Shown piece by piece: positions 43,071 through 64,000 of a stretch of DNA of 64,000 nucleotides (positions are counted from its first letter, which is position 1; every line of letters begins with the position of its first letter). The notes under the pieces are model-generated. The model was not told the DNA's origin and made no database searches. It was given only the letters and a program-made list of their open reading frames with translations. The stretch covers positions 166,070-230,069 of IMG/VR virus record IMGVR_UViG_3300028840_005860. One strand, 5' to 3'. Both the position numbers and the translations under genes were made by a program.

Positions 43071-43503
43071 TCCCAGGAAGGCTCTTCAGCAGATGAAGCA
43101 GCTCGGGCTGCTCGAGGTGGTCTCCGAGATGATCAGGTCGAGCAAGCCCTTCTCCGCCTACATGGCGAACCAGCTGCGGACGAACAGGAGGGTCCCCCTC
43201 CTCCTCGACCTCATGGACATGGGGGTCCCCGCGACCACGCCCCTCTCGTTCCTCGACCGCGCGGGACAGCAGCGCGTCCGCGAGGTCACGATGCCGATGA
43301 CAGAGCGCGAGGCCGCGGACTTCGTGAACCTCCTGATCAAGCCGCCCGTGGACAACAGGCGGATCATCGAGGAGCTCGGGCTCCCAGGTCCCGAGCGGCG
43401 CCTCATCCTGCCGATGGCGCGCGACCTGATCCTCAAGAACCCCCCTCTCGCGGCCGACGGGCGCAGGCTGACCGAGGAGGTCCTCCGAGCATGGCCGCGC
43501 TAG
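43063..43503 (+). CDS. C-terminal part of the split CCA-adding enzyme
   Basis: MGDPRKALQQMKQLGLLE matches the helix that follows motif E in class II CCA enzymes; VDNRRIIEELGLPGPE tail motif; GGAGG RBS inside the endonuclease gene. Confidence 0.75.
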   Translation: MGDPRKALQQMKQLGLLEVVSEMIRSSKPFSAYMANQLRTNRRVPLLLDLMDMGVPATTPLSFLDRAGQQRVREVTMPMTEREAADFVNLLIKPPVDNRRIIEELGLPGPERRLILPMARDLILKNPPLAADGRRLTEEVLRAWPR

Positions 43504-49500: not shown

Positions 49501-49625
49501 CCGAGGAGGCCTGGCGCGGGCCGACGCGCTTCGCGGGGAACGTGACCGACGCGTGGCTCGCCCGCATCCGAAGCATCCATCCCGACGATCCCGACCGCCC
49601 CGTCATCGTGCTCGACGCGGCCTGA
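43491..49625 (+). CDS. 2044-aa polyprotein-like head protein: SH3-like, Ntn hydrolase, DNA topoisomerase IB, GNAT, coiled-coil domains
   Basis: CIIAG...KTRD...EGVNEHG...RTNHG (Ntn); ERPGN, VGKSG, KDLRG, VGHEP..LKSQY (Topo IB R-K-R-H-Y); ISVRRDARGEGHARRAM...WYEGMGF (GNAT). Confidence 0.85.
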   Translation: MAALAQLALRVAARHLAADAYFEVGEEVLYGKFKNRRGRVVRIFDDERGVPSVEIEPIPKGRRQNRMVGLYGIWKLPEARKTAAMDREACIIAGRKFGDGLCLMKTRDRAYDPKLQVLHVERDGTEMAVVFDKTTGYLEGVNEHGIGIVNTTLMVVRDEQEGVKKTKGDKQKGPKRSKDGPKIFKALEAETLDDAIRSLVSFRGGIKGHTFVADGERMVCIERSGRHPAKIHRLDPTRVNTRTNHGVAYPDAGYTHGDDYVSSIVRRWEAQKRLQNVNNPEVVAPALVQAIHEADSPFNPVRCTDKMRTTSQLTIDTTNPTLYLYVIPGHADLSPPRNVLPDGRRPKIPVRTFRYRQRMEDRTEQPGRKTAREVLARYKSKKKVRSEDGDETTVYEYSERQVQHRNREKAERIERLRGSIGKLRAQLEKDIRSDDPKKRDVAAAVGLMDHTYERPGNDESASDGHYGVTNWKVRHVRFGDGQAKISYVGKSGVRQQKSVTDRDLVKALRAACADKGAEATCLDVSADEVNEYLRPFGVTAKDLRGLHANGEMKDRLRRVRREGGPLPEDPEKREEKLRKEFDRALDEAAETVGHEPSTLKSQYLVPGLEEDYKRDGTVSESHAKKAAEAVTDTASFYVIAPEALRGMLDDTDWLELAHDLWPGEGRPGGDAEVLVPEMERQVRESGGAVLDTGWDGGFDVGVRGKYDELGRIEPFDLPVREKGAVPPYGLRKSASLLRVAAEEGTSAERRILANALVAPVLVARTREWWLREAPHLYRIARDHEKPRPRIEGLEFPSNLFTILWYEDADGNDLGDGDLEGEPGAPEGAQYQHSQFPHVLHHNVLRLNDDGTSTDLGGGEASYPEDLVNAMVRSGDWDVGDAIMVAAQSCERCLNVLCHHYDLDDGYPFGSEEYWSAGTRCPMCENVHAPARTAATPNYEAYVERKRREGEPPLDRERWERRVLGVRDEEGPRDWDAHRRDVMRRHELDKLHAPYDPENKHLRIDLISVRRDARGEGHARRAMEEILGWADRAGATVTLTPTSEFGASKKRLTRWYEGMGFVPNKGRNKDFRFQDAMIRAPQVKTATKSDAELDEEAVEEMLREEPKKKPPRYDLRDNRPLEDDDEEDLEGLGGGDRGDRDLSLKWNKVGRRVAFRWLATPGRLSAVRTAMRHRAKVTPDSEFQKEIADKKFRHPETGNEVAFGSLPTEEQHRIFEEWKKKHAPKGEPAEGKEKPKEEPEGRSPEEIDQDISEAREAAKKLKGEIRDLKEKIGDAKKAIEDWTELTKGEVGEEMRKKGDAVIKEMKRIVLDAEDDIEYKTQDLKDARRRVQELKEEREDPTGAKAKKEQEEREQKEKRTRQAVKDTVAAMEKMLGRGSRLPQGTRQEIESALGDFDYPQLEAFALAFQGELKDLSGQDPTSPDVISMANRQAKIGFDVEGVTDPEELARRAAEVGYVTNVVANPMVVGGRPVGQTEMDDAARSARAREAFAQFENLHPKLQRMAAERIREELRGLDEDTDRAVELESILSAVDLAHVGQTGEALPGRPQPSAGNAALIKRMIADGNADRMFQTKKDFFSEGSREAMAQALEEMDDADVANFITGDDPSHPFYELSQSMRTEGAGEFNQMIKDFLIKDFLNDTWGDRAARDVMEAAGVEDWDSPEARAELLEESKRAGETPLGQVLEAKERVEAARAAGEEPSQDDLDLVSSYFEPEAGEGVVGNARALLGLLRDKFKKHVISPAVAVLNHFVKTRDPKVLSQETLPHPDERSPEPRPKEEREKARVEMPTEAEAPESKPGKPEVVAPEWAAEGRKPAEDLTPEKAMRRRIVLKSERQKLEAQREKAPPEERGKYDVKIRKLDKELERASVPKRPEKKAPEPEKKAPEPEKVKEPEVVRKRRKQLEKVKSVRDEARAALKEMEPAARKQLEQKLEKMDAAIRQVEEQHAEDEKHGPGDVWKTKGGNWRAKNEEGLSRSFKKRDEAETYARGEPEKEWSAEFKAVSPEEAWRGPTRFAGNVTDAWLARIRSIHPDDPDRPVIVLDAA

Positions 49626-52062: not shown

Positions 52063-54843
52063 GTGGCGTTCCTGAAGACCGCGCGCGCGGGCATCATCCA
52101 CCGGGACTGGTCCCCCGAGAACTGGGGCAACTGGGTCGGACGACACCGCGACACCATCGCCAACGGCCCCTACCGGACGGCGTCGAGCTCCCCGAACCTC
52201 ATCGCCCAGGCCTCGGAGATCCTCAAGGAGGACTTCGACCCGAGGAACTACCTGCTGACCCACGCGACGATAGTCGCCTCCGTAGACACGGAGGACGTGC
52301 CGAACGTGAAGCTCGGCACCGTCACCGAGCTCGGGAGGAAGATCGACCGGCGCTGGCCGAACTACCACATCACGCCCGAGACCGAGCGCTGGACCAACAA
52401 CAACGGCGACTCCTGGGACCGTCCCGTGCTCCTCAAGAGCTACCGGACCTTCGTCGGATCGCACAACTGGGTCGAGCACGTCCAGGTCGAGGAGCAGTCG
52501 AAGGGCCGCATCATCGACGCCGTCGCGCGCGACATCGGCCCCTCCATCTACGTCGACATCCTGACGGCCACCAACCGGAGGCATGCCAGCCTGATCCGCG
52601 ACATCGAGAGCGGACGCCTGAACACGCTGTCCATGGGCTGCTTCCTTGCCGGCACCCAGGTCACGATGGCCGACGGGACTCGCGTCGCCATCGAGGACGT
52701 GGTGCCCGGCGACATGGTCCTCACCCACAGGGGACGTGCTCGTGAGGTGGTCAACAAGCAGATCCGAACTTACCGGGGGCCCTTGCGCCGTATCAAGGCC
52801 GTCGGCGTGTCCTCCACCATCCGAGCGACGGCGAATCACGGGTTCCACGTCCTGCGTGCCGCGAAAACCTGCGCCTGTGGCTGTGGCGAGGCTCTGCCGA
52901 CGACGAGCACCCTGACGCGCCGCATGACCCGGCGGTTCAAGCACGGACACGACAAGCGCATCTACAACCCGAACAACACCTACTCTCTGGAAGAGGCGCG
53001 CCGTCGCGAGGAACGGGTTCGATCTCTCAAGGAGTTCACCTTCGAGAAGATTCGTGCGGACGAGCTCGAGATCGGGGACTTCCTCGCCTTCCCGCGCCCC
53101 GCCGAGGGCGTCTCCGAGGGTTGGACTTCCGGCAAGGCGCGCCTCGTCGGCTACTTCTTGGCCGAGGGCTCGTATCTGAAGCACCGGGGTAGGCCCGTCG
53201 AGGTGCAGTTCAGTTTCTCCATGTCGGAGAGGGACACGTACGTCCGGGAGGTGGTCGATCTTCTTCGGCAGGAGTTCCCGTCGGCCAACGATCCCTGGGT
53301 GCAGGAGCGACCGACGAGGGGTGGCTGTGTCGTTCACATGACGGGCCCTGAGGCGGTCGAGTGGTTCTACCGGCATTGCGGCGAGTACAGCCACGGCAAG
53401 CGCATGAGCGCCGAGACCATGTCGCTGCCTGTCGAGCTACATAGGCATCTCGTGGGTGCGTGGATCAACGGCGACGGGACGTTCGGCGAGGCGAACAAGA
53501 CCCTCTCCGGCACGAGCGTGTCTTACGACCTCGCCTGTCAGATGCACTACCTCCTCGCTCGGTGCGGAGTCTTCGCGCGCATGGGGTGCGACCAGGAAGG
53601 TCGCAGCATCGAGGTCTCGGAGGCCATCGGTGCCGGATGGTTGCCCGACCCGGAGACCAGAAAGCGACCCGCGCTCACGTTGGTCATGGGACTCACGGGG
53701 CAGCAGCCCCTCGCGGGATTCTCCGACAAGGTCGGCAGGAACTCGCAGGCCGAGCAACAGCTTCGAGTGCTCGACGACTACGTGATCTTCCCGATCACCT
53801 CGATCGAATCCGAGTGGTACGAAGGGCCCGTTCACAACATGGAGGTGGAGGAGGACCACACCTACGTTGTGGAGGGCGTGACGGTTTACAACTGCTCGGT
53901 CACCGAGACGCAGTGCACCAAGTGCGGAAACGTCGCGGCCGACGAGACGGAGATGTGCCCGTGCGTCAAGTACGAGAAGCACAACGTCTTCTTCGACTCT
54001 CGCGGGGTCCGTCGCAAGGTCGCCGAACTCTGCGGCCACCACTCGCTCGACCCGACCGGCGGCGTGAACTTCATCGAGGCGTCCTGGGTCGCCGTCCCGG
54101 CCTTCGCCGGGGCCGTCACCCGCAACATCCTCCAGCCCGAGACCATCAGCGTCCAGACGACCGAGAAGATGCGGAGCGTCCTCGCGTCGCCGCCGCCCGA
54201 GTGGGTCGAGGGCGCCATTCCGAAGGCCGCGTCCTTCGAGAGTCCCAGCGTGTCGCCGCGCACCGACGTGACCACCCTGGAGGGGCGCGTCGCCCAGATG
54301 CCGGCCGCTCCCGAACCCGCGCCGGGCGGCATGCCCGGGATGCCGGGCGGCATGCCCGGGATGCCGGGGATGCCCGGCGCCGAGGAGAAGGACCCGCTCG
54401 AGGAGCTCGAGGACGAGGTCGAGAAGTTCGTCGTTGACAAGGTGAAGAAGAAGCTGCGCAAGAAGCTGCGCGAGGAGGTCGCCGAGAAGGCGGTCTCCGA
54501 GCCCGAGCTCGGCGCCTCCACCAACGAGAACGTCAACCACCAGGCGTCGGACCGCAGGATCGCCGCGCTCGTCAGCGGCACCTCGGCCCTGCTGAGGATC
54601 GCCCGCTCGGACGTCGAGCTGCTCGACGGCGTGGCCAGGCTCAGCGACGACCTGGGAGTCGAAGTTTCGAGGGACCTCTACCGCGCGGCCCTCCGCGTCG
54701 GGTCTACGGAAGGCCACCCGTCCCTCGATAGGTACCTCTCGCGTGCTGCGGAGGTACTCGGCCGCAAACCGACAACGGGAGAAGCCAAGACCCTGGTGCG
54801 TCTTGGGCGGATCCTTTCACTGCGAAAGAAGACCCGGTTCTAG
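52063..54843 (+). CDS. Prohead maturation protease (assemblin/HK97-type serine protease), intein-containing
   Basis: NNNGD, VEH (candidate catalytic His), LSMG|C (candidate catalytic Ser), CTKCG, FIEASWVAVPAF.GA; sits upstream of the scaffold and capsid genes. Confidence 0.8.
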   Translation: MAFLKTARAGIIHRDWSPENWGNWVGRHRDTIANGPYRTASSSPNLIAQASEILKEDFDPRNYLLTHATIVASVDTEDVPNVKLGTVTELGRKIDRRWPNYHITPETERWTNNNGDSWDRPVLLKSYRTFVGSHNWVEHVQVEEQSKGRIIDAVARDIGPSIYVDILTATNRRHASLIRDIESGRLNTLSMGCFLAGTQVTMADGTRVAIEDVVPGDMVLTHRGRAREVVNKQIRTYRGPLRRIKAVGVSSTIRATANHGFHVLRAAKTCACGCGEALPTTSTLTRRMTRRFKHGHDKRIYNPNNTYSLEEARRREERVRSLKEFTFEKIRADELEIGDFLAFPRPAEGVSEGWTSGKARLVGYFLAEGSYLKHRGRPVEVQFSFSMSERDTYVREVVDLLRQEFPSANDPWVQERPTRGGCVVHMTGPEAVEWFYRHCGEYSHGKRMSAETMSLPVELHRHLVGAWINGDGTFGEANKTLSGTSVSYDLACQMHYLLARCGVFARMGCDQEGRSIEVSEAIGAGWLPDPETRKRPALTLVMGLTGQQPLAGFSDKVGRNSQAEQQLRVLDDYVIFPITSIESEWYEGPVHNMEVEEDHTYVVEGVTVYNCSVTETQCTKCGNVAADETEMCPCVKYEKHNVFFDSRGVRRKVAELCGHHSLDPTGGVNFIEASWVAVPAFAGAVTRNILQPETISVQTTEKMRSVLASPPPEWVEGAIPKAASFESPSVSPRTDVTTLEGRVAQMPAAPEPAPGGMPGMPGGMPGMPGMPGAEEKDPLEELEDEVEKFVVDKVKKKLRKKLREEVAEKAVSEPELGASTNENVNHQASDRRIAALVSGTSALLRIARSDVELLDGVARLSDDLGVEVSRDLYRAALRVGSTEGHPSLDRYLSRAAEVLGRKPTTGEAKTLVRLGRILSLRKKTRF
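52639..53892 (+). mobile_element. Intein with LAGLIDADG endonuclease (418 aa)
   Basis: G|CFLAGTQVTMADG...ATANHGF...VGYFLAEG...AWINGDG...VTVYN|C. Confidence 0.93.
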
Positions 54844-54874: not shown

Positions 54875-56383
54875 ATGCAGCGTCAACGACGTACCTGGAC
54901 GAAGAAGGCCGAGCAGGACAAGACGGCTTCCCCGCCGCCTCAGATGCCGGCCGTGGACCGTACCGAGGGGCCCGACCACCCCGCGTACCACGCGGACCCC
55001 GACGCCGACCAGTACAAGTCGGGCGACACCAGCTCGTGGGCCGAGGACCCCCACAAGCCGATGAGCCCGGAGTCCCCGCCCCCGGCAATGCCGGGCAACC
55101 TGACCACCGACGAGCTCGACCACCCGGGCACCTCGGACTTCCAGAAGACGCCCGAGAGCCCCGAGAAGGCCGAGGCGGCCGGAGGCGGCGGCAAGCAGGC
55201 GTCCAAGGAGCCGACGCTCCGCCAGCTCGCCGAGCAGCGCGCGACGCTCTGCGTCCGCATCGCCAGCGCCCTCATGCCGCAGGCCGACGTCAAGACCGTC
55301 GAGAACAAGGCCCTCGAGCTGATGGACCTCGACGACGCGCAGCTGCGGGCCACCGCCAGCACCCTCAAGATCGTCGCTGGCGAGGAGGAGGAGGAGGAGG
55401 TCGAAAAGGAGATGGAGACCGAGGCCGGCAAGAAGGCCAACGTCGAGGTCGTCGCCCGCGTCGAGAGGCTCGAGGGCGCCGTCGGCAAGCTCGTCAAGGC
55501 GATGAGCCACTTCTTCGGCCAGGAGGGCGACGAGTCCGACACGGACGGGATGTCCGACAGGGAGCTCCTCGCGTACCTGACGGCCGAGGACACGGACGGC
55601 GACGGCATCGACCAGAGCAAGAACGACTACCCGCAGGGGTACGACGTCGAGAAGATGGGCCAGGAGGAGGACGAGGAGGAGATGCTCAAGGCGATGCTCG
55701 AGGAGATGGACGAGGAGATGGCCGTCACCGCGGCCACCAAGGAGGAGGAGGTCACCGAGCCGCTCGCCAAGGGCGAGAGCATTCAGTCGGGCGAGGGCGG
55801 CAACGTCAACCCCGACGAGAAGGCCGAGACCCCTCAGGTCGAGCAGAGCGACGGCTCCGAGAAGACCGCCCAGGACGACGAGGCGAAGGAGAAGCCGAAG
55901 GAGTTCATCGAGGGCGAGGAGTCCGAGGGCACCAAGGAGTCCGACGAGGGCGAGAAGGAGGGCGCCTGCAAGAAGAAGGCGGAGGACGAGGAGACCCCCA
56001 AGGCGGCCGAGAACGACATCGACATCACCGCGGGCGTCGATCCGATGGGCCTGATGGAGGAGACGAGGGAGGCGTCGGCCGACGACGAGCTGATGCAGCT
56101 GTACGCCGACCTCGACCTGCCGAAGACCGTGGGCGAGGAGCCCGAGGAGGAGGCCCCCGTCGAGGAGGTCGTCGAGGAGACCGTCGAGGAGGAGAAGGAG
56201 GCTGGCAAGAAGAAGGCGGCCGACGAGCCCGAGCTCAAGCCGCAGGCCAAGGTCGCCAGCTCCGGCGCCAAGACCATCGGCAACGTCGCCCTCAGCAAGG
56301 AGGCTCGCGACGAGATCAGCGAGCTCGAGAAGATGTGGGAGCACGCTCCTAGCGTCAACAAGGTCTTCGGACTCCCCGAGTAG
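54875..56383 (+). CDS. Capsid scaffolding protein
   Basis: Highly acidic and disordered; lies between the protease and capsid genes; C-terminal LEKMW...PSVNKVFG. Confidence 0.7.
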   Translation: MQRQRRTWTKKAEQDKTASPPPQMPAVDRTEGPDHPAYHADPDADQYKSGDTSSWAEDPHKPMSPESPPPAMPGNLTTDELDHPGTSDFQKTPESPEKAEAAGGGGKQASKEPTLRQLAEQRATLCVRIASALMPQADVKTVENKALELMDLDDAQLRATASTLKIVAGEEEEEEVEKEMETEAGKKANVEVVARVERLEGAVGKLVKAMSHFFGQEGDESDTDGMSDRELLAYLTAEDTDGDGIDQSKNDYPQGYDVEKMGQEEDEEEMLKAMLEEMDEEMAVTAATKEEEVTEPLAKGESIQSGEGGNVNPDEKAETPQVEQSDGSEKTAQDDEAKEKPKEFIEGEESEGTKESDEGEKEGACKKKAEDEETPKAAENDIDITAGVDPMGLMEETREASADDELMQLYADLDLPKTVGEEPEEEAPVEEVVEETVEEEKEAGKKKAADEPELKPQAKVASSGAKTIGNVALSKEARDEISELEKMWEHAPSVNKVFGLPE

Positions 56384-56572
56384 GGGAGCCCGACTCCAGG
56401 GAAACGCCCCATAGTTCGACTATAGGGGCGTTTGCCCTCGGTAAAACGTGAATAGATGGGCCCGTATGTGTACCGGAAGGGTTCGTGATCGGTAGCGTGA
56501 AAAGTGACCCCACGGTGGGGTCGGCCGGCGCGAACACCACCCCAACCCTGTAAACAAGGAGCAGAAGCACAG

Positions 56573-57232
56573 ATGCCAATGCTTGGACAGGCGAGCGGTG
56601 GATGGACCGAGTCAAGCGCCGCGCTGAGACTTCTCCACGTGCAGATCAGGAACGCCACGGGAGTCCTCACCGCGGACGGCTTCACTCAGGCCAACCCGCC
56701 CATCGTCACCACCGCGGGCACGATCTCGACGCAGGTCAACACCGGAGTCTCCGGCGTCCTCTCGGGATCCGTCGCCTTCACACGGCCCGACCAGGGCTCG
56801 AACTTCATCGGCGGCCCCGTCGAGCCGGGCGCCCCCGATGAGATCCTCATCCAGCCCCTCGGCGTGTTCGTGAACACGGCCGTCGGCAACGCGTACGAGA
56901 ACCAGCCGGGGCCCGCCTCGGGGAAGAACACGTACGTGTCGGCTTCGGGCACGTTCGGCAACCAGCTGTTCGAGACCGAGGCGCTGGCCGCGGCGGGCGC
57001 GCTCGCCGTGGGCGCGGACCTCATCTACACCGCCGGACAGCAGCTCGTCGCCTCCCGCAACGGGTACCTCATCATGAGGGTCACCACCCAGACGGGCGTG
57101 GCGATCTCACTGGACCTCGCGACCATCACCTCAGAGGTGGCAAACGGTGCCGCGGCGTCCACCACGCTGGCCATCCTCAAGATGCCGCCCGACTCGGAGC
57201 AGTTCGAGTTGGTCTACGACCAAAGGATCTAG
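56573..57232 (+). CDS. Head decoration/cement-like protein
   Basis: Gly/Ala/Thr-rich beta protein immediately upstream of the capsid gene; AAGGAG RBS. Confidence 0.6.
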   Translation: MPMLGQASGGWTESSAALRLLHVQIRNATGVLTADGFTQANPPIVTTAGTISTQVNTGVSGVLSGSVAFTRPDQGSNFIGGPVEPGAPDEILIQPLGVFVNTAVGNAYENQPGPASGKNTYVSASGTFGNQLFETEALAAAGALAVGADLIYTAGQQLVASRNGYLIMRVTTQTGVAISLDLATITSEVANGAAASTTLAILKMPPDSEQFELVYDQRI

Positions 57233-57247
57233 GAAAGGAGATAGAAG

Positions 57248-58126
57248 ATGCCTACTGGTGTTGACAACGCAGTAAAGCAGCGGCTGATCTCCGAGTACAT
57301 CCGGACTCCGGCAGGTCGTGCCAAGCTCGCAGCCTCCCTCACCCAGCCCCTCCGCACGCGGCGGGACTACACGTCGGTCGGTCGGAAGACCTTCCTCGTC
57401 GAGCAGCTGCCCGACGGGGCCCTCCCGATCTACGACAAGGACCCGGACGTCACCGCGTTCGTGGTGGGTGAAGAGGGCGAGAACATCATCGCGGTCACCA
57501 AGCCGCGCCGGGTCATCTTCCCGTTGTTCGAGATCGCGAGCAACCCGGAGATCCCGCTCACCCAGATCAAGGAGCGCCGCTTCGACCTCATCGAGCGTGC
57601 CCAGGACCTCGCGCGTGCGCAGATCCAGGCCGCTGAGGACGAGCGCGTGTTCGCCGTTCTCGATGCCATCGCGACCAACGGTTTCGACAGCATCGCCGGC
57701 GGGACGAACCCGGACATCCCGGTCGTCGCTCCCATCTCTGGTGCGGTACTCGCCGACGCCTTCGCACTCATCGAGCGCCACGACCTCAGGGTCGCTCGCG
57801 TGTACATGAATGCGCGGGACTACGCGGACATCCGCAAGTTCGGCAGGGACATCCTCGACATCGAGTCGCAGGCCACCCTGCTGAAGACTGGTCTCCAGGC
57901 CACCCTCTGGGGTGCCCAGGTGATCACCTCGCGCATCGTGCCGGCAGGCACGGTGTACGTGTGCTGCGAGCCCGAGATGTTCGGGCGCATCCCCGTGCGC
58001 ACCGAGCTGACTGTGCTCTCCGCCGACGATCCGAAGGCTCGAACCATTGGCTTCAGTGTGTTCGAAAACCTCGGCATAGGCGCGTATAACCCGCGTGGGT
58101 TGACTCGCCTCGTCGTCACGCGCTAG
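57248..58126 (+). CDS. Major capsid protein (HK97 fold)
   Basis: 292 aa; GRAKLAASL.QP.R.RRDY...GRK...LP.GA.P.YD, FEIASNP, AQIQAAED, NPRG; resembles the Bxz1/E3-type capsid family as recalled (not searched); strong RBS and downstream terminator. Confidence 0.88.
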   Translation: MPTGVDNAVKQRLISEYIRTPAGRAKLAASLTQPLRTRRDYTSVGRKTFLVEQLPDGALPIYDKDPDVTAFVVGEEGENIIAVTKPRRVIFPLFEIASNPEIPLTQIKERRFDLIERAQDLARAQIQAAEDERVFAVLDAIATNGFDSIAGGTNPDIPVVAPISGAVLADAFALIERHDLRVARVYMNARDYADIRKFGRDILDIESQATLLKTGLQATLWGAQVITSRIVPAGTVYVCCEPEMFGRIPVRTELTVLSADDPKARTIGFSVFENLGIGAYNPRGLTRLVVTR

Positions 58127-58140
58127 TCCAACTAGCCGCT

Positions 58141-58182
58141 AGAGACCCCGAAGGGCCGCGAGGTTCTTCGGGGTTTCTGTTT
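58141..58182 (+). terminator. Rho-independent terminator after the capsid gene
   Basis: AGAGACCCCGAAGGGCC-GCGA-GGTTCTTCGGGGTTTCT stem with GNRA loop and T-rich tail. Confidence 0.85.
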
Positions 58183-58292
58183 GGTCGGATGCCACGCTAC
58201 ACGGACAGACCAAAAAGCTCCACTAACGGATTCTGAAACACCGGAAGGCACGGTCTTGACGGCGAAGGTGTTGTTCGTCATGGTACCGAAAC

Positions 58293-61200
58293 ATGACGGA
58301 CGCGGCGGACCCTCGAAGATCTGGACGAACACGTAGGCGTGAGCAGAGACCGACACGCCCGGACATGGAGAGCCCGTTCTGGACGCGTGCCGTTGGGTTA
58401 GGGTTGCCTGAGGAGGAGCGAGACGGGTACGTCGCTCTGTTCGAGAGTCAGCAGGGCAAGAAGAAGCGTCACGGGTTGGTGACGGGGCTCGGACTCTCGC
58501 TGGAGGCGTGGCAGACGCTCGCTCACGAGTTCACGGACTTGGAGATGGGACGGGCTCTAGGGCTCCTCTCGGCTGCGGTGACCGTCTTTCGCAAGCGCCG
58601 GGGCATCAACACCCTGACGGCCCGACAGCGTCGTGAGAAGGCGCAGGGAGGGCGACGACGGTCGCTCGATGACCTCACCAAGGCCCAACTTGAGAGTCTG
58701 ATCGCCGAGATGCCTCTGAAGGCGGTGGCCGCCCTCTACGGGGTGGCGCCTCCCGCGATACGGGCTCGATGTCGTCGGTGGGACATTTACGTGCCCTCCA
58801 AGTCGGAGCGCGCCGTTTCCGACAAGACTCTGACCGAGGAACAGAAGCAGGCCGTCTGGGGGATGATGCTAGGCGACGGGCACCTGACCGAGACGGGCTA
58901 CTTTAGGCTGGCGCACGGCTACGAGCAGTACGAGTACCTGATGCACTGCCGAAAACTCCTCGCCTGCATCGCCCGGTCCGTGACCTACGACGAGTCGGTG
59001 AAGGACAACGGCACGCTGTATCACGAGTTCTCCTTTCGGACGGACAACCATCCGTGGCTCAGGATGCAGCGCCCGCTCTGGTATCCGAACGGTTCGAGGA
59101 CGAAACGGCCGCTCCCCGAGGTGATCGACCGCCTCAGCCCGTTCGGTCTGGCCCTTTGGTTCATGGACGACGGTCATCGGGGGGACGTGGCTTCGTTCGC
59201 CGTAGGCGACGTGCCGTTTGATTTGGCCGAGGAGGTCGCCAGACGGACCGCGGCTCGCTTCGGGATCGAGACGTACATCAAGCCGCACAGTCGTCACACG
59301 ACCTGCAAGAGTTTGGCGATCCGCGGCGCGAGCCTCGACAGGTTTTTCTCTCTCATAAGGGACTACGTTCCGAACAACCTGTTGCACAAGCTGCCCGCTT
59401 CTTACTGGAAGGAGGGCACGCGCGCTGAGGGTCGTGTGGACGAGACGGACGGGCGCCTGTTCCCGAGAAGCGTTGCCGCACGCAGCAGAGACTACGAGAC
59501 CTTAGACGACCAGGAACGGGAGATTCTCGTGGACGAGGTGGTGGAGTACTGGCGCCGAGAGGGGTTTCCCTTTCACGAGCCTCGCGTGCGAGACCTGAGG
59601 ACGCTGGTGAACGTGACGGGGCGCCAGGCATTGAAGGGAGACCTGCTGCGGGCGTGGCAGGTGGGGCAGTCGTCCTGTCTGGCTTTCCAGCCCCATTACT
59701 GGGAAACGCCGGTTCACGGGCGAGAGGGCGAGACGCCGCTTGAGAGGTTCGGACGCGACGACGATCTGCGGAGGGAGATTCTGCGACTCCTCACGAAGGG
59801 GCGCGTTCCGAATGGTGCTCGTCTGAGGTCGGCCCTAGCGGGATCTCACAACTCGGTGTCGAACTTTCGTCCGAGCTCCGCGAAGGTTCTGGTGGAACGG
59901 TTCTGTCCCACGGGAGGCACAGTGTGGGACCCTTGCGCTGGCTGGGGCGGCCGTCTTCTGGGAGCTACGATGGCCTCCTGCATGCCGCGGTACGTCGCGT
60001 GCGAACCGCAGCCCTTGACGTTGCAGGGGTTGCGCGCGCTCGTTGACTGGCTGGGGCGGTTCGTGCCGGGTGCCGAAGAACGAGTCGAGCTCCACGCGGC
60101 CCCCGCGGAAGACTTCGAGCCGCCTTCTGGTCTTGACCTTGTCTTCACGAGTCCTCCGTATTTCAAGAAGGAGGTCTACGGGCACGAGGACACGCAGTCG
60201 TGGGTCCGTTATCCGAGCTACAGGGAGTGGATCGAGGGTTTCCTGGCTCCGGTCATGGTCAGGGCTCGCGATAGGCTCAGGCCCGGCGGCTGGCTCGTGC
60301 TCAACGTCGCGGACGTCACCATCGAAGGAAATCGCTATCCTCTCGTAGCGGACGCGAGGCGCGTGGCCGAGGAACTCGGACTCGGGGAGCCTGAGATCCT
60401 TCGCTACGAGCTCCCGTCGCTGCTCGGGGACGACCGCGAGGAGCCCGTCCTCTGTTGGTCGAAGTCAAGGGAGGCCACGCACCATCTCGGAGGTCCAGGG
60501 TTGCAGCTCGTCATGTGCGAGAAGTGTGGTCGGGTCACGGACCATCGGGTGCTTCGCGCTGGGATCTGCCCCTCCTGTGATGCGAAGGTCGTACGCTGTC
60601 AGTACCCGGGTTGTGGAAAGGACCTCCCCGGCGCCATCGCGACCCGCAGGTACTGTGATGACTGCGCCAGGAGGATCGACGCCGAACGGGCTCGGGATCG
60701 TCGGCGCGTCCTCCGGGAAAGGGTCCCCGTCAGAGTAATCAGGAAGTTTACCTGTACATGCGGGGTCGAATTCGAAGTACCAACGGACGGAGGGCGCCCC
60801 CGTGCATGCCCTTCCTGCACGAGCGCCCGCAAGGCCGAGGAGGCCGAAGCCGAGATCCGACGTCGCACCAAGACCTGCGCCTACCGACACTGTGATCGCG
60901 CGTTCGTAGATCATAGTCCGAGGAACAGTGCGAAATTCTGTCACGAGGAGCATCGGCGACGTGAGAAGGCATTTCGAACTGGTCGTGTTACCAGCGTAAA
61001 GGACTTCCGCAAGTCCGATCCCGTGTTGGACGAGAGGCCGTCCTCGGCGATCCACACCTGCAAGGGATGCGGAAACCCCTTCGAGTTGCCGAAGGGATCA
61101 CAGAGAACGCGATGTTCCGACTGCGAAGCCGAAGCGCGGAAGAAGGTCTGCAAGACGGAAGGCTGCGAGACGGAGTTTCACGACGAGTCCGAGCGCAACA

Positions 61201-61436
61201 ATCGGCGCTACTGTGAGGCTTGTCAGGCGAAGACGTCGGGACGGACGGGCAAGAGGAGGACAATCCAACGCAAACTCGATCCCGACAGGCTCGCCGTTCT
61301 CGCGGCTGCGGGCGTGCCTATCAAGAAGATGGCTGAGGTGTTGGGGGTAGGTGCTTCGACGCTCGATCGGTATCTCCGCAAGCACGGCATCGAGCACCCA
61401 CGGACGGGGGGCAACCCGAAGCACCGAGGCGCCTGA
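58293..61436 (+). CDS. Fusion: HTH + LAGLIDADG endonuclease + amino-DNA methyltransferase + zinc ribbons + HTH
   Basis: WGMMLGDG and LALWFMDDG; NFRP, WDPCAGWGGR (motif I), FTSPPYF (motif IV); many CxxC pairs; C-terminal IKKMAEVLGVGASTL. Confidence 0.85.
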   Translation: MTDAADPRRSGRTRRREQRPTRPDMESPFWTRAVGLGLPEEERDGYVALFESQQGKKKRHGLVTGLGLSLEAWQTLAHEFTDLEMGRALGLLSAAVTVFRKRRGINTLTARQRREKAQGGRRRSLDDLTKAQLESLIAEMPLKAVAALYGVAPPAIRARCRRWDIYVPSKSERAVSDKTLTEEQKQAVWGMMLGDGHLTETGYFRLAHGYEQYEYLMHCRKLLACIARSVTYDESVKDNGTLYHEFSFRTDNHPWLRMQRPLWYPNGSRTKRPLPEVIDRLSPFGLALWFMDDGHRGDVASFAVGDVPFDLAEEVARRTAARFGIETYIKPHSRHTTCKSLAIRGASLDRFFSLIRDYVPNNLLHKLPASYWKEGTRAEGRVDETDGRLFPRSVAARSRDYETLDDQEREILVDEVVEYWRREGFPFHEPRVRDLRTLVNVTGRQALKGDLLRAWQVGQSSCLAFQPHYWETPVHGREGETPLERFGRDDDLRREILRLLTKGRVPNGARLRSALAGSHNSVSNFRPSSAKVLVERFCPTGGTVWDPCAGWGGRLLGATMASCMPRYVACEPQPLTLQGLRALVDWLGRFVPGAEERVELHAAPAEDFEPPSGLDLVFTSPPYFKKEVYGHEDTQSWVRYPSYREWIEGFLAPVMVRARDRLRPGGWLVLNVADVTIEGNRYPLVADARRVAEELGLGEPEILRYELPSLLGDDREEPVLCWSKSREATHHLGGPGLQLVMCEKCGRVTDHRVLRAGICPSCDAKVVRCQYPGCGKDLPGAIATRRYCDDCARRIDAERARDRRRVLRERVPVRVIRKFTCTCGVEFEVPTDGGRPRACPSCTSARKAEEAEAEIRRRTKTCAYRHCDRAFVDHSPRNSAKFCHEEHRRREKAFRTGRVTSVKDFRKSDPVLDERPSSAIHTCKGCGNPFELPKGSQRTRCSDCEAEARKKVCKTEGCETEFHDESERNNRRYCEACQAKTSGRTGKRRTIQRKLDPDRLAVLAAAGVPIKKMAEVLGVGASTLDRYLRKHGIEHPRTGGNPKHRGA

Positions 61437-61457
61437 CGGGGTATAAGGGTCGAGATG
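61414..61457 (+). repeat. Junction repeat copy 1 (stop codon + promoter-like GGGGTATAAG + ATG)
   Basis: ACCCGAAGCACCGAGGCGCCTGACGGGGTATAAGGGTCGAGATG. Confidence 0.93.
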
Positions 61458-61655
61458 GAGCTGTCTGAACGCGTGCGGAGCATGGGGGACGACGAGCTCG
61501 AGCGGGTGATCGCGAAACTCGAGACCGAGCGGGGGACCTGGCACGACGAGCTGGAACGCGACGGTCTCGTCGCCCTCCTGCGGCTGGAGCAGAAGAGACG
61601 AGACGGCACCGAGACGCATCCGACGAAACACGAGGACCGAGATGACCGACCCTGA
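61455..61655 (+). CDS. Small hypothetical protein (paralogue at 63930)
   Basis: MELSERVRSMGDDELER vs MELSERIRSMTDDELER. Confidence 0.75.
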   Translation: MELSERVRSMGDDELERVIAKLETERGTWHDELERDGLVALLRLEQKRRDGTETHPTKHEDRDDRP

Positions 61656-62457
61656 CGTGCCGGTTGACGAACGAGATGCCTGTCGGATCCTTCAGGAGTT
61701 CTATCGGGAGCGGGGCCACCGTCCTTCGTGCGGCGACCTCAGGGAACTCGACAGGGCACTCAGGCGACGGGGAACTTCCCTCTTCGTCCTGTGCAACGAC
61801 ATGGGGTTTCCGGAGACGTACCGCACCCAAGAGCGAGGCTGGACGAGACGGAAGGCTCAAGAAAAGGTGTTCCAGTTCCATGCGAGTCACGGAAGACGCC
61901 CGAGTTGTAAGGAGATGGGATCGCTTCCAACCTGGCTCAAGTACCATCTCGACGAGACGCTGAGCGACTTCTGCAACGAGATCGGCATCCCGGAGGACCA
62001 ACCCCTCCGAACTCGGGACTCGATCCGGGCAGATGTTCAAGCGTTCTATGACGAGCATGGCCACCGTCCGACTCAGAGGGACTTCAAGAACCATGACGAC
62101 TGGCTCCAGAAGCAGGGGAGTTCCATCTCGAGGATGTGTGACGAGATGGGCCTGGTCGGAGACCGATTCGGACGGAGGAGGAGACGCAGCGAGAAGGAGA
62201 TCGAGCAGCGCGTGCGGGCCTTCTACACCGAGCACGGTCGGCGTCCCACCCAGGCTGACCTTCCAGGCGACAACAGATGGCTCCACAGGATCTTGGGGAG
62301 TTCGCTCCCGAAGCTCTGTGATGCAATGGGGTTTCCTCGAAGTCCCCCAACGCGTCGCCGACCCCCAGCTCGGATCATGGAGGCGATGAGGACCGAGATC
62401 CGGGAGTTCTTCGACCAACACGATCCCTCGACAGACCCGAAGCACCGAGGCGCCTGA
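61642..62457 (+). CDS. Protein of four ~55-aa helical repeats (homing-endonuclease-associated repeat-like)
   Basis: F[YH]xxxGxRP...[WA]L...[ST][LI]..[LFM]Cxx[MI]G four times. Confidence 0.75.
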   Translation: MTDPDVPVDERDACRILQEFYRERGHRPSCGDLRELDRALRRRGTSLFVLCNDMGFPETYRTQERGWTRRKAQEKVFQFHASHGRRPSCKEMGSLPTWLKYHLDETLSDFCNEIGIPEDQPLRTRDSIRADVQAFYDEHGHRPTQRDFKNHDDWLQKQGSSISRMCDEMGLVGDRFGRRRRRSEKEIEQRVRAFYTEHGRRPTQADLPGDNRWLHRILGSSLPKLCDAMGFPRSPPTRRRPPARIMEAMRTEIREFFDQHDPSTDPKHRGA

Positions 62458-62478
62458 CGGGGTAGAAGGATCGAGATG
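62435..62478 (+). repeat. Junction repeat copy 2
   Basis: ACCCGAAGCACCGAGGCGCCTGACGGGGTAGAAGGATCGAGATG (42/44 identical to copy 1). Confidence 0.93.
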
Positions 62479-62664
62479 GCCCACCTCGAGTTCCGTTGCC
62501 GGTATTGCGCCTCGCTGATGAACGTGAGCGCGGCGTCCTACGCGGAGAACCCTTGGTGTGTGAACTGCCTGGACGAGCGCATGGCAAGGGCGGCTGCCGA
62601 AAATCCGCTCATCGGCTGGCGCGTGGAGGGCGACTACATGGTTCCGATCTGGAGGGACGACTGA
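62476..62664 (+). CDS. Small zinc-ribbon protein
   Basis: CRYC...CVNC; starts at the ATG of the repeat. Confidence 0.7.
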   Translation: MAHLEFRCRYCASLMNVSAASYAENPWCVNCLDERMARAAAENPLIGWRVEGDYMVPIWRDD

Positions 62665-62689
62665 CCCGAGGCACCGAGGCGCCTGACGG
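62664..62689 (+). repeat. Junction repeat, left half only
   Basis: ACCCGAGGCACCGAGGCGCCTGACGG. Confidence 0.9.
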
Positions 62690-62880
62690 CTGCGCTAACA
62701 GCGCACTCCCTTTTGGAGTACAAGGGAGGAAGGCGCCGGGAGTGCCTGCCGTTCGCGCCTCCTCCGGGGGCATGGTGAAACTTCCTGGAATCCTGAGTCT
62801 CCTGGTCGCTGACCGTTTCCCGAGACCCAGCCCCCGCAACGCGAACACGGAGCCCTGACGGGTCTCAAGGAAAGGATCAA
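62690..62880 (+). ncRNA. Candidate structured leader RNA
   Basis: Non-coding gap with several complementary pairs (TGCGC/GCGCA, GCACTCCC/GGGAGTGC, GGAGG..GGCG/CGCCTCCTCC, GAGACCC/GGGTCTC). Confidence 0.4.
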
Positions 62881-62885
62881 CGATC

Positions 62886-63911
62886 ATGGACGGGAAAAAT
62901 TCGTCTACCGCTCCTCTCAAGACCCAGGCCAAGGCGCTTCGCAAGTATCTGGCCGAGCAAGGTGTCGAGCTCGGGCACTCGAAGTGCCTCGAGGCCGTCG
63001 CACGAACCCAGGGATTCAAGAACTGGGACACGGCGTCGGCCCGCGTGAAAGGGGGTGAGGGGGTTCTTGGAGAGTCCGAGTTTGACGCCCGTCGCCCCGC
63101 GGGGGCACGTGGAGTTCTCGAGGCCGGCGAGGAGGGGCACGTCGTTCGCGTGTTCGTGGACGATCAGGAAGTACTCGGCCAGCTCGTGGACGCGGGGGTG
63201 AGTTTGACCGGCTCGCGTACTCTCCGTTTCGATCGGGAGACCGAGATTCCCCTTCCAGAGCAGGGGGCTCGCGTCCTGCTCCGCGTGGGGAACGAGGTCG
63301 TTGAGCGCGGGGTGGGGGGCGCAAGGTCGGCGCACGGCGAGACCGAGGTGCGGTTCTTCGAGGTAGACGACCTCGCGGAGGACATGCCAGCCCACGTGTT
63401 CGCCAGGTATGACTGTCTGCTCCCCGTATCTCTCCCCGGAAACGATCTCCGTGATCAATTAAAGCACTGGCCTCCAGGTCGCGCCTTCCTGTGGCTCGCC
63501 AAGCGGTACGACGCGGCCGCCGCTCAGTGTCGCCGTGTCGGAGGGGTCCTGAAGGAACTTTCGGACATCGAGATTCGCGCCGACGGACACGACATCGTCA
63601 TCTCTGCCTCTAGCGAAGCGCTGGAGCCTCTGCGGGACGAGGGGGTCCTGCAAAGGAGTCCGGAGGAGCAGCAGGAATCCTGGGAAACGAAGGAAGCGTT
63701 CTCCGCGGCCCTGCCTACAGAGATGACGGAGCTGGGTTTGCCATTCAGTCTCTCCGACGTGCTCAAGTGGTTCGAGAACAGGTACGAGGAACTCTGCGGA
63801 CTGAACCCGGCTTGGGTTCGCCTTCAGCTCGAGAACATGACCCGAGAGGGCCTGCTTCAGGATGTCGGTGACGGGAAGTACGTGGTCAAGGACGAGAGCG
63901 CAGATACCTGA
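62886..63911 (+). CDS. Protein with N-terminal Glyoxalase_8-like (glyoxalase superfamily protein) helical domain
   Basis: LKTQAKALRKYL...G.EL.HSKCLEAVAR..GFKNWDT. Confidence 0.7.
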   Translation: MDGKNSSTAPLKTQAKALRKYLAEQGVELGHSKCLEAVARTQGFKNWDTASARVKGGEGVLGESEFDARRPAGARGVLEAGEEGHVVRVFVDDQEVLGQLVDAGVSLTGSRTLRFDRETEIPLPEQGARVLLRVGNEVVERGVGGARSAHGETEVRFFEVDDLAEDMPAHVFARYDCLLPVSLPGNDLRDQLKHWPPGRAFLWLAKRYDAAAAQCRRVGGVLKELSDIEIRADGHDIVISASSEALEPLRDEGVLQRSPEEQQESWETKEAFSAALPTEMTELGLPFSLSDVLKWFENRYEELCGLNPAWVRLQLENMTREGLLQDVGDGKYVVKDESADT

Positions 63912-63932
63912 AGGGGTATAAGGACCGAGATG
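63907..63932 (+). repeat. Junction repeat, right half only
   Basis: CCTGAAGGGGTATAAGGACCGAGATG. Confidence 0.85.
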
Positions 63933-64000
63933 GAGTTGTCCGAGCGCATCAGGAGCATGACCGACGACGAGCTCGAGCGCGCGGCGGCGAAGTTGGAGGC
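63930..64000 (+). CDS. Small hypothetical protein, paralogue of 61455..61655 (runs off the window)
   Basis: MELSERIRSMTDDELERAAAKLE. Confidence 0.7.
   Translation, partial: MELSERIRSMTDDELERAAAKLE

What the first reader, a model, noticed from the sequence alone, without database searches (positions are those of the whole stretch)
58293..61436. LAGLIDADG endonuclease fused to an SPPY-type DNA methyltransferase and a zinc-ribbon array
Seen: one 1047-aa ORF with HTHs, two LAGLIDADG helices, MTase motif I then motif IV (SPPY), about ten Cys-pair modules and a terminal HTH. It has lower GC than the core genes and sits right after the capsid terminator, with a possible TTGACG-17-CATGGT promoter. 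Inference: a selfish element coupling homing with methylation (self/non-self marking or anti-restriction), or an MTase using a LAGLIDADG scaffold for targeting.
Basis: partly seen in the sequence, partly recalled or inferred. Interest (0 to 1): 0.6.

Follow-up and report, generated by a model that had tools for sequence, protein, structure and literature searches.

The report
Homing endonuclease fused to DNA methyltransferase
Just after the capsid gene of a 230-kb phage, one gene encodes a 1047-residue protein that joins an I-SceI-like DNA-cutting "homing" enzyme to a DNA-methylating enzyme and six zinc fingers. Related phages carry the cutter alone, a methylase alone, both fused or neither at that spot, so this is a mobile-type cassette with a build I found described nowhere.

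Summary
Window 58293-61436 (+) is one open 1047-aa frame. It contains:
- an HTH;
- a complete two-motif LAGLIDADG domain (Pfam E 5e-17; I-SceI/I-WcaI-like, Z 20.4) with all four active-site residues kept;
- a complete about 320-aa class-I amino-methyltransferase (motif I, then an invariant TSPPY);
- six zinc ribbons;
- a terminal HTH.

The gene follows the terminator hairpin of an ultra-conserved capsid gene (89-98% identity in 573 IMG/VR contigs of up to 618 kb).

Across 72 related loci this slot holds the fusion (14), a free-standing HTH-LAGLIDADG-HTH endonuclease (22), a methylase without the endonuclease (3) or neither (32). That needs at least 18 switches on the capsid tree. Within subclades, though, the fusion is inherited collinearly with the capsid gene. 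All seven fusion homologues whose context I looked up sit at this same slot.

A 99.93%-identical natural strain has a 2-bp deletion in a (GC)4 tract. It splits the methylase and gives two ORFs, while the endonuclease part stays intact.

Best reading: a free-standing homing-endonuclease cassette fused to a DNA methyltransferase. Cleavage, methylation and any coupling between them are untested. I rate it a new variant of a known kind, of moderately high interest.

The parts
57248..58126 (+). Major capsid protein gene (292 aa); the conserved anchor on the left of the slot
   Evidence: phrog_2522 E 7e-50. It is 89-98% identical in 573 IMG/VR loci and 90% identical to LR745208.1.
58127..58190 (+). 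Terminator-like hairpin after the capsid stop. The variable cassette slot begins after it.
   Evidence: RNA fold dG -38.3 kcal/mol, z -4.4. An equivalent GC-rich hairpin plus T-run is present in nearly all related loci of every class.
58293..61436 (+). The 1047-aa fusion ORF (P0001); alternative start at 58365 (M25)
58674..58781 (+). N-terminal helix-turn-helix (aa 128-163), of the type found in free-standing relatives
   Evidence: HTH_Tnp_ISL3 E 7e-5, sub-threshold. It aligns with the N-terminal HTH of the 303-327-aa endonucleases. The model shows three helices.
58818..59402 (+). I-SceI-type monomeric LAGLIDADG endonuclease domain (aa 176-370). Motif 1 Asp195 is at 58875-58877 and motif 2 Asp293 at 59169-59171. 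Lys271 and Lys366 are also kept.
59505..60476 (+). Complete amino-methyltransferase module (aa 405-728): a helical N-domain plus a Rossmann core. Motif I is at 59928-59951 and TSPPY at 60147-60161.
   Evidence: More than 1000 stand-alone homologues of about 340 aa. Vibrio phage AUS02009.1 is annotated as an N4-cytosine methylase. Fold pLDDT 94. PADLOC mad2 8e-10 and Type II MTase models.
60032..60039 (+). (GC)4 tract. A (GC)3 allele in a 99.93%-identical strain shifts the frame and splits the ORF into 559 + 457 aa.
   Evidence: L087 and L088 gene calls, alignments, run X3, sequence
60516..61223 (+). Zinc-ribbon array (aa 742-977): 12 knuckles forming 6 ribbons, alternating CxxC ribbons with CGNR-like fingers
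   Evidence: The same array opens the LAGLIDADG-less L070-type methylase.
61248..61433 (+). C-terminal HTH tail (aa 986-1047). It is 48-58% identical to the tails of free-standing endonucleases at the same slot.
   Evidence: PADLOC mad1 2e-5
61414..61458 (+). First copy of a 45-nt direct repeat (last codons, stop, RBS and ATG of the next ORF). Further copies lie at 62435-62479 and 62664-62689.
   Evidence: only these three copies in the genome
61642..62457 (+). Neighbouring 271-aa gene with a homing-endonuclease-associated repeat. It ends with the same PKHRGA tail and the same junction repeat.
   Evidence: PF18780 E 1e-11

Best explanation
The ORF is a real single gene. It encodes a chimera built on a free-standing, I-SceI-type LAGLIDADG homing endonuclease of HTH-LAGLIDADG-HTH build. 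A complete TSPPY amino-DNA-methyltransferase and a six-ribbon zinc array are fused between its nuclease core and its C-terminal HTH.

The gene occupies an accessory cassette slot just downstream of the terminator of the ultra-conserved major capsid gene. The host is a cosmopolitan clade of large and huge phages.

Shown here:
- the domain identities;
- conservation of the catalytic residues of both enzymes;
- strict fidelity to one locus;
- repeated gain, loss or replacement at that locus;
- domain shuffling with neighbouring endonuclease genes;
- a natural frameshift allele that breaks the methylase only.

Inferred:
- During co-infection the endonuclease cuts a long site at or near the capsid-gene end or slot of relatives that lack it. 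Repair then copies the cassette in (intron-less homing).
- The HTHs and zinc ribbons extend DNA binding.
- The methylase modifies phage DNA, probably m4C or m6A. It travels as linked cargo that benefits the phage (for example against host restriction) and so stabilises the cassette.
- This would explain why the fusion is retained and co-diverges within subclades.
For: Domains:
- LAGLIDADG_2 over the full model, E 4.6e-17.
- I-SceI alignment places D44/D145/K122/K223 on D195/D293/K271/K366. These are invariant, or K/R at 271, wherever the domain is present among the 16 homologues.
- I-WcaI Z 20.4.
- MTase motif I, the acidic motif II residue and TSPPY are invariant. Fold pLDDT 94.
- Paralogous copies pass PF01555. 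PADLOC gives mad2 and Type II MTase hits. A stand-alone phage homologue is annotated as an N4-cytosine methylase.

Locus:
- All seven homologues whose context was looked up lie directly after the capsid gene.
- Slot states in 72 loci: 14 fusion, 22 endonuclease only, 3 methylase only, 32 neither.
- At least 18 changes on the capsid tree; discordant sister pairs have 98-100 support.
- A clean 2.49-kb indel begins 58 nt after the capsid stop in L014 versus L015.

Shuffling:
- The C-terminal HTH is 48-58% identical to the tails of free-standing endonucleases, although the nuclease cores are only 26-31% identical.
- The zinc array is shared with L070-type methylases.
- A 45-nt junction repeat occurs three times.

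Literature: phage homing-endonuclease genes cluster beside essential genes, capsid genes included, and shuffle domains (Barth 2023, PMC10448857).
Against: - No cleavage, methylation or transcription data exist; no RNA run holds the gene.
- Within subclades the fusion is collinear with the capsid module, and its divergence tracks that of neighbouring genes. Much of the pattern could be vertical descent plus loss in a generally hypervariable accessory slot.
- 'Empty' slots carry unrelated cargo, including a Dam-like methylase.
- No target site could be identified. Capsid 3'-end identity drops in only some discordant pairs.
- The nearest solved structures of the methylase are tRNA m2G enzymes, so a DNA substrate is inferred from context.
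- PF01555 is sub-threshold on this protein.
Confidence: 0.55

Rival explanations
1. Domesticated targeting module. The protein is essentially a phage DNA methyltransferase. The LAGLIDADG domain, HTHs and zinc ribbons serve only to bind or tether it to DNA, with no cleavage and no homing. The gene is a vertically inherited accessory gene that is often lost.
For: - Long-type fusions follow the capsid-tree clades and are collinear with the capsid module within subclades.
- Their divergence tracks that of neighbouring genes.
- This methylase family is repeatedly fused to DNA-binding N-terminal modules such as HTH and ParB.
- The two-domain AF2 model has pTM 0.80 over 611 residues, which suggests a fixed mutual orientation. 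This is an inference, as no PAE was available.
Against: - All four I-SceI active-site equivalents are conserved down to 30% identity. Pure binding modules, such as maturases, usually lose them.
- Free-standing endonucleases of the same family occupy the same slot in sister phages.
- The short and long subfamilies replace each other on the capsid tree, for example L014 inside clade A.
Confidence: 0.2
2. Single-chain restriction-modification-like weapon. The endonuclease cuts unmethylated DNA of competing phages or of the host. The fused methylase marks the phage's own copies of the site, so methylation is the immunity mechanism.
For: - Nuclease and methylase lie in one chain, as in Type IIG/IIC enzymes.
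- The methylase part resembles defence-system methylases: mad2 8e-10 and Type II MTase models.
- The same methylase family is also fused to Endonuclease VII domains (P0035, P0042).
- Some relatives carry a second methylase plus unknown repeat domains.
Against: - A natural strain at 99.93% identity has the methylase split by a frameshift while the endonuclease part is intact. This would be hard to tolerate if methylation were the only self-protection.
- I-SceI-type enzymes recognise about 18 bp (established knowledge), which is too rare a site for general restriction.
- Free-standing relatives persist without any methylase.
Confidence: 0.12
3. Two genes or an artefact. The long frame results from an assembly or indel error, and the real genome encodes separate endonuclease and methylase/zinc-finger proteins.
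For: Contigs L087 and L088 and run X3 show a 2-bp shorter (GC) tract and two ORFs of 559 and 457 aa.
Against: - The break falls inside the Rossmann fold, between motifs II and III, not between domains.
- Two runs from other studies hold the intact frame, though they may be sources of the window's assembly.
- Fourteen or more divergent homologues (30-69% identity) from independent metagenomes keep one frame across the same junctions.
Confidence: 0.03

Closest known systems
I-SceI / I-WcaI (monomeric two-motif LAGLIDADG homing endonucleases, Pfam PF03161)
   Same: Full-length sequence and fold match. Both LAGLIDADG Asp residues and both active-site Lys equivalents are conserved.
   Different: Those enzymes are encoded in group I introns of mitochondrial rRNA genes and have about 235 aa and no extra domains. 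This one is free-standing in a phage, flanked by HTHs and fused to a methylase and zinc ribbons.
Free-standing phage homing-endonuclease genes beside essential genes (T4 seg/mob genes; ICP1 T5orf172 and HNH genes; Barth et al. 2023, PMC10448857)
   Same: The position next to a highly conserved structural gene, presence/absence among relatives, a modular nuclease-plus-DNA-binding build, and domain shuffling.
   Different: Those are GIY-YIG, HNH or T5orf172 nucleases. The paper mentions no methyltransferase (0 occurrences). Here the nuclease is LAGLIDADG and is fused in frame to a methylase.
Endonuclease elements inside phage methylase genes: LAGLIDADG inteins in mycobacteriophage N6_N4 methylases (Kelley 2016, PMC5050341) and the ShiLan out-of-frame HNH insertion (Arsenault 2025, PMC11855218)
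   Same: A homing endonuclease physically joined to a phage DNA methylase gene.
   Different: There the endonuclease interrupts the methylase, and it either splices out as an intein or is read in another frame. Here there are no Hint blocks. The endonuclease lies N-terminal to an uninterrupted methylase and is translated in the same frame as one protein.
Type IIG/IIC restriction-modification enzymes and ParB- or HTH-methyltransferase fusions of phages
   Same: A nuclease or DNA-binding module and an amino-methyltransferase in one polypeptide. Members of the same methylase family are fused to ParB, HTH and Endonuclease VII modules.
   Different: To my knowledge, known restriction enzymes use PD-(D/E)XK, HNH, GIY-YIG, PLD or half-pipe nucleases, not LAGLIDADG. 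The context here is a phage structural module, not a cellular defence island.

Membership tests
LAGLIDADG homing endonuclease, I-SceI type (PF03161) | Two LAGLIDADG motifs in one chain forming the pseudo-dimeric alpha-beta-beta-alpha-beta-beta-alpha core | tested here: met
   Pfam positions 2-168 of 168, E 4.6e-17, 62.9 bits against a cut-off of 25. I-SceI aligns over residues 30-227. I-WcaI gives Z 20.4, rmsd 3.1 over 200 residues.
LAGLIDADG homing endonuclease, I-SceI type (PF03161) | Metal-binding Asp at the end of each motif, plus the two active-site Lys (I-SceI D44, D145, K122, K223; roles taken from the literature on I-SceI) | tested here: met
   D195, D293, K271 (K or R in homologues) and K366 are conserved in all homologues that have the domain.
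LAGLIDADG homing endonuclease, I-SceI type (PF03161) | Site-specific cleavage of a long target, and super-Mendelian spread into empty alleles | not testable with these tools
   Only indirect evidence: a polymorphic slot with at least 18 state changes, a clean indel between sister loci, and locus fidelity. Vertical descent within subclades is also seen.
Intein-borne endonuclease | Hint splicing blocks flanking the endonuclease | tested here: not met
   No Hint or intein family hits P0001 even at E up to 1. The model shows HTH, LAGLIDADG and MTase only. The neighbouring 926-aa gene does show Hint hits, so the method can detect them.
Exocyclic-amino (N4-C / N6-A) DNA methyltransferase | SAM-binding motif I, the acidic motif II residue and the catalytic (S/D/N)PP(Y/F) motif IV on a class-I Rossmann fold | tested here: met
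   DPCAGWGG 546-553, E571 (E or D in homologues) and TSPPY 619-623 are invariant. pLDDT 94; class-I MTase hits with Z 15-18.6. As I recall it, F-T-S-P-P-Y fits the PROSITE N4-methylase signature.
Exocyclic-amino (N4-C / N6-A) DNA methyltransferase | Membership of Pfam N6_N4_Mtase (PF01555), with its usual beta-class order (motif IV before motif I) | tested here: not met
   19.5 bits against a cut-off of 26.7, and only the motif IV-VI part matches. The order here is I then IV, as in the gamma class. Paralogous copies in P0006 and P0013 do pass (66-72 bits). The family is therefore related but permuted or divergent.
Exocyclic-amino (N4-C / N6-A) DNA methyltransferase | DNA rather than RNA or protein as substrate, and the identity of the modified base | not testable with these tools
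   The best structural neighbours are tRNA m2G enzymes TrmN, Trm14 and Trm11 (Z 17.8-18.6), in a flat list. The context favours DNA: phage genes, fusions to HTH, ParB, Endonuclease VII and LAGLIDADG, and mad2 and Type II MTase models.
Type IIG/IIC single-chain restriction-modification enzyme | Nuclease and methylase in one chain, acting on the same short site, in a cellular defence role | tested here: inconclusive
   The one-chain feature is met. The context is a phage structural module. The methylase-broken allele persists in nature. Site specificities are unknown.
Phase-variable methyltransferase (simple-sequence-repeat switch) | An in-frame repeat tract whose length varies between strains and switches the frame; it is usually long | tested here: inconclusive
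   (GC)4 and (GC)3 alleles exist. The tract has only 4 units and is not conserved in the closest homologues, which have different residues there.
CGNR-type zinc finger (PF11706) | C-x(2-4)-C ... [YF]-C-x2-[CH] followed by a basic helix | tested here: met
   30.0 and 28.8 bits against a cut-off of 24, in two stretches. Three such fingers alternate with three CxxC ribbons.

The most novel reading that the evidence does not exclude
The fusion is a functional unit: a LAGLIDADG-based, restriction-modification-like homing system. The tethered methylase would modify a base inside or next to the endonuclease's long target on the carrier genome, giving immunity. Unmodified co-infecting relatives would be cut and converted. 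This would be the first natural endonuclease-methylase pairing built on the LAGLIDADG fold. It would also be a mechanistic bridge between homing endonucleases and restriction-modification systems in phage-phage competition.
Probability: 0.12. Interest if true: 0.85.

Novelty: new variant of a known kind. Interest (0 to 1): 0.6.

Why it matters
Homing endonucleases and restriction-modification systems are the two classic families of selfish DNA-cutting elements. They are usually treated as separate solutions. One avoids self-cutting by disrupting or mutating its own site; the other avoids it by methylation.

Here, a natural protein family joins an apparently active I-SceI-type endonuclease to an apparently active DNA methyltransferase. 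I found about 16 distinct proteins in metagenomes, and 14 of the 72 evaluable capsid loci carry the fusion.

The family is tied to one slot beside the most conserved gene of a globally distributed clade of huge phages. That gives a concrete system for three questions:
- Can methylation and homing be coupled?
- How do accessory cassettes spread among huge phages?
- Could a methylase that arrives already tethered to a long-site DNA binder be useful as a targeted-methylation scaffold?

If the two activities prove independent, the finding is still a clear example of a homing-endonuclease hot spot and of domain shuffling next to a capsid gene in uncultured huge phages.

Tried and rejected
- Megablast of 56000-64000 against GenBank phages found no match. 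Relatives had to be found through proteins.
- The terminator scan missed the capsid hairpin. Folding showed it.
- A first N-terminal HTH (aa 50-118) could not be shown. There is no self-similarity to 119-180 and no Pfam hit on residues 1-120.
- Foldseek against the PDB with the methylase model returned only generic Rossmann methyltransferases. The VIA search gave a flat list led by tRNA m2G enzymes. The fold therefore cannot settle DNA versus RNA.
- Intein reading: rejected, because there are no Hint blocks.
- A conserved slippery repeat: rejected, because the closest homologues have different residues at the (GC)4 site.
- Co-conversion signal: capsid 3'-end identity falls in some discordant sister pairs but not in all. 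This is suggestive only.
- Expression: no RNA run holds the gene.
- Five literature searches found no description of an in-frame LAGLIDADG-methyltransferase fusion. The library is incomplete, so this is not proof of novelty.
- The large representative-protein search was not used, as the operators advised, because the word search already found relatives.
Full report
**What is there**

Window 58293-61436 (+) is one uninterrupted 1047-codon frame. The window is the last 64 kb of a 230,069-bp linear IMG/VR virus record that CheckV rates about 90% complete.

The gene directly upstream (57248-58126) is the major capsid protein (phrog_2522, E 7e-50). A strong hairpin follows it (dG -38 kcal/mol, z -4.4).

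The frame's GC3 is 0.76, against a genome median of 0.87 for long ORFs. The genes downstream share this lower value.

Gene callers on near-identical contigs start the protein at Met25 (window 58365), and the homologue P0005 starts at the aligned position. The first 24 codons are therefore uncertain. The proposed TTGACG-17-CATGGT promoter is in the sequence but fails a consensus scan.

**Domains**

*Endonuclease.* Residues 186-351 match Pfam LAGLIDADG_2 from end to end (E 4.6e-17). The nearest solved protein by sequence is I-SceI, aligned over residues 30-227 of its 235.
- That alignment places I-SceI D44, D145, K122 and K223 on D195, D293, K271 and K366. The first two are the metal ligands, and the two lysines give nickases when mutated (roles from the I-SceI literature).
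- All four are conserved in every homologue that has the domain, with K or R at 271.
- An AF2 model of residues 120-730 (pLDDT 88, pTM 0.80) has the I-SceI orthologue I-WcaI as its top structural match (Z 20.4, 200 of 226 residues).

*Methyltransferase.* Residues 405-728 form a complete methyltransferase module.
- More than 1000 stand-alone proteins of about 340 aa align over its whole length. One is a Vibrio-phage gene annotated as an N4-cytosine methylase.
- Motif I (DPCAGWGG, 546-553), an acidic motif II residue (E571) and motif IV (TSPPY, 619-623) are invariant.
- The fold is a confident class-I Rossmann methyltransferase (pLDDT 94).
- The motif order, I before IV, is gamma-like. It is permuted relative to Pfam N6_N4_Mtase, which this protein matches only below threshold. 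Paralogous copies in relatives do pass the threshold.
- The nearest structures are tRNA m2G enzymes, in a flat list. A DNA substrate is therefore inferred from context: phage genes, fusions to HTH, ParB, Endonuclease VII and LAGLIDADG modules, and matches to the PADLOC mad2 and Type II methylase models.

*Zinc array and tail.* Residues 742-977 hold 12 Cys/His knuckles, making six ribbons. Three CxxC ribbons alternate with three CGNR-type fingers. The last 60 residues form an HTH.

*Not an intein.* No Hint blocks are present.

**Relatives and the locus**

A word search found about 16 proteins with the same LAGLIDADG-methylase order, at 30-69% identity, all from metagenomes. A 1229-aa version with two HTH-LAGLIDADG units occurs in the 485-kb uncultured phage LR745208.1.

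In all seven homologues whose context could be read, the gene lies immediately after a capsid gene of about 292 aa.

That capsid protein is extraordinarily conserved. IMG/VR holds 573 loci at 89-98% identity, on contigs of up to 618 kb. Neighbouring genes are only 30-85% identical. The nearest isolates are distant (Tunturiibacter phage Tunturi_5 at 48%, Bacillus phage G at 38%) and have no such gene after the capsid gene.

**The slot is polymorphic**

Of the 80 retrieved capsid loci plus the earlier ones, 72 had enough downstream sequence to score:

| State of the slot | Loci |
|---|---|
| LAGLIDADG-methylase fusion | 14 |
| LAGLIDADG endonuclease without methylase | 22 |
| Methylase without LAGLIDADG | 3 |
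| Neither | 32 |
| Ambiguous | 1 |

- On a capsid-gene tree these states need at least 18 changes. Well-supported sister pairs differ: L011 (fusion) versus L010 (endonuclease only), and L014 (fusion) versus L015 (neither).
- L014 and L015 differ by a clean 2.49-kb indel that begins 58 nt after the capsid stop.
- Nearly all loci keep a terminator-like hairpin before the variable part.
- 'Empty' slots carry other cargo, including a Dam-like methylase in L023.

**Mosaic origin**

The free-standing endonucleases (303-327 aa) are HTH-LAGLIDADG-HTH proteins.
- Their C-terminal HTH is 48-58% identical to the last 60 residues of the window's protein, although the nuclease cores are only 26-31% identical.
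- Only the window's subclade (with P0004 and P0005) has this tail.
- The window's protein therefore looks like a methylase-zinc module sitting between the core and tail of such an endonuclease, or like a fusion that captured the tail by recombination.

The zinc array also opens the LAGLIDADG-less L070-type proteins, which run zinc array, two unknown repeats, then a second methylase. The 1560-aa P0006 is the sum of both types.

A 45-nt direct repeat occurs three times at successive gene junctions just here. It carries the last codons ('..PKHRGA'), the stop, the RBS and the next ATG. It occurs nowhere else in the genome.

**Vertical as well as horizontal**

- The fusion-protein tree has a short subfamily without the zinc array and a long subfamily with it.
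- The long-type subclades broadly follow the capsid clades.
- Within subclades, nucleotide homology runs unbroken from the capsid gene to the end of the fusion gene and stops there.
- Identity of the fusion tracks that of neighbouring genes.
- Short-type genes nevertheless occur inside long-type clades, for example L014.

The history is thus long residence punctuated by loss and replacement. That fits a homing element that carries useful cargo. It also fits a merely hypervariable accessory slot.

**A natural two-ORF allele**

Contigs L087 (JGI) and L088 (ENA) are 99.93% identical to the window. They carry (GC)3 instead of (GC)4 at 60032-60039.
- The frame then ends after residue 583, and a 457-aa ORF follows.
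- The break lies between methylase motifs II and III, so it destroys the methylase and leaves the endonuclease part intact.
- Contigs of run X3 show the same deletion. Runs X1 and X2, from other studies but possibly sources of the window's assembly, show the intact frame.
- L087, L088 and X3 may derive from one data set, so I count them as one independent observation.
- The intact frame is ancestral, since all divergent homologues have it.

The allele shows the methylase is dispensable at least in the short term. It weakens the idea that methylation is the only protection against the fused nuclease.

**Conclusion**

The best-supported mechanism is a free-standing I-SceI-type homing-endonuclease cassette at a hot spot beside the capsid gene. 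It is fused to, and probably stabilised by, a DNA methyltransferase as cargo (confidence about 0.55).

The rivals are:
- a domesticated DNA-targeting role for the LAGLIDADG domain (0.2);
- an RM-like coupling of cutting and methylation (0.12);
- an artefact or two genes (0.03).

Known cases join these two activities only through inteins or out-of-frame insertions inside methylase genes (PMC5050341, PMC11855218). Surveys of phage homing-endonuclease genes near capsid genes do not mention methylases (PMC10448857). I found no description of this in-frame architecture in five literature searches. I rate it a new variant of a known kind.

Noticed in passing
window 52063-54843 (+): A 926-aa gene carries an intein (Hom_end_hint, Hint_2 and LAGLIDADG_3 hits). 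Its N-terminal part weakly matches a head maturation protease (phrog_18299). The same intein-bearing gene is seen in relative L096. This makes a second LAGLIDADG-type selfish element in the same structural module.
   Followed up: partly
window 43491-49625 (+): A 2044-aa protein has a eukaryotic-type topoisomerase I catalytic core (PF01028, E 1e-24) plus a GNAT acetyltransferase region. It is syntenic upstream of the capsid module in L003 and L004.
   Followed up: no
window 61414-61458, 62435-62479, 62664-62689: A 45-nt direct repeat links the 3' ends of three consecutive ORFs to the RBS and ATG of the next ('..PKHRGA' tail, stop, junction). These are the only three copies in the genome. It looks like a cassette-junction or recombination scar.
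   Followed up: partly
window 61642-62457 (+): A 271-aa protein has a homing-endonuclease-associated repeat (PF18780, E 1e-11) but no recognisable nuclease domain. Small ORFs of 66 and 62 aa flank it, the latter with CxxC pairs.
   Followed up: no
G000:C1:57565-57900 (outside the window; locus L093): A second, shorter LAGLIDADG_2 match (model positions 4-106, 31 bits) lies in a 185-192-aa frame. It is possibly a degenerate endonuclease gene.
   Followed up: no
window 57248-58126 and loci L007-L086: The capsid protein is 89-98% identical across 573 IMG/VR contigs of very different size (up to 618 kb) and GC content. Adjacent genes are 30-85% identical. This is an unusually frozen capsid gene in a widespread huge-phage clade.
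   Followed up: partly
L070:7012-9366; L057 and L031 likewise; P0006 residues about 740-1560: Relatives carry a LAGLIDADG-less protein at the same slot. It has the zinc array, two copies of an unknown domain of about 150 aa (WWGRVGE...LHLxP motif) and a second TSPPY methylase.
   Followed up: partly
L023:6963-7841: In one 'empty' relative, the first gene after the capsid gene is a D12-class (Dam-like) N6-adenine methylase. Different methylase families thus recur at this late-gene slot.
   Followed up: no
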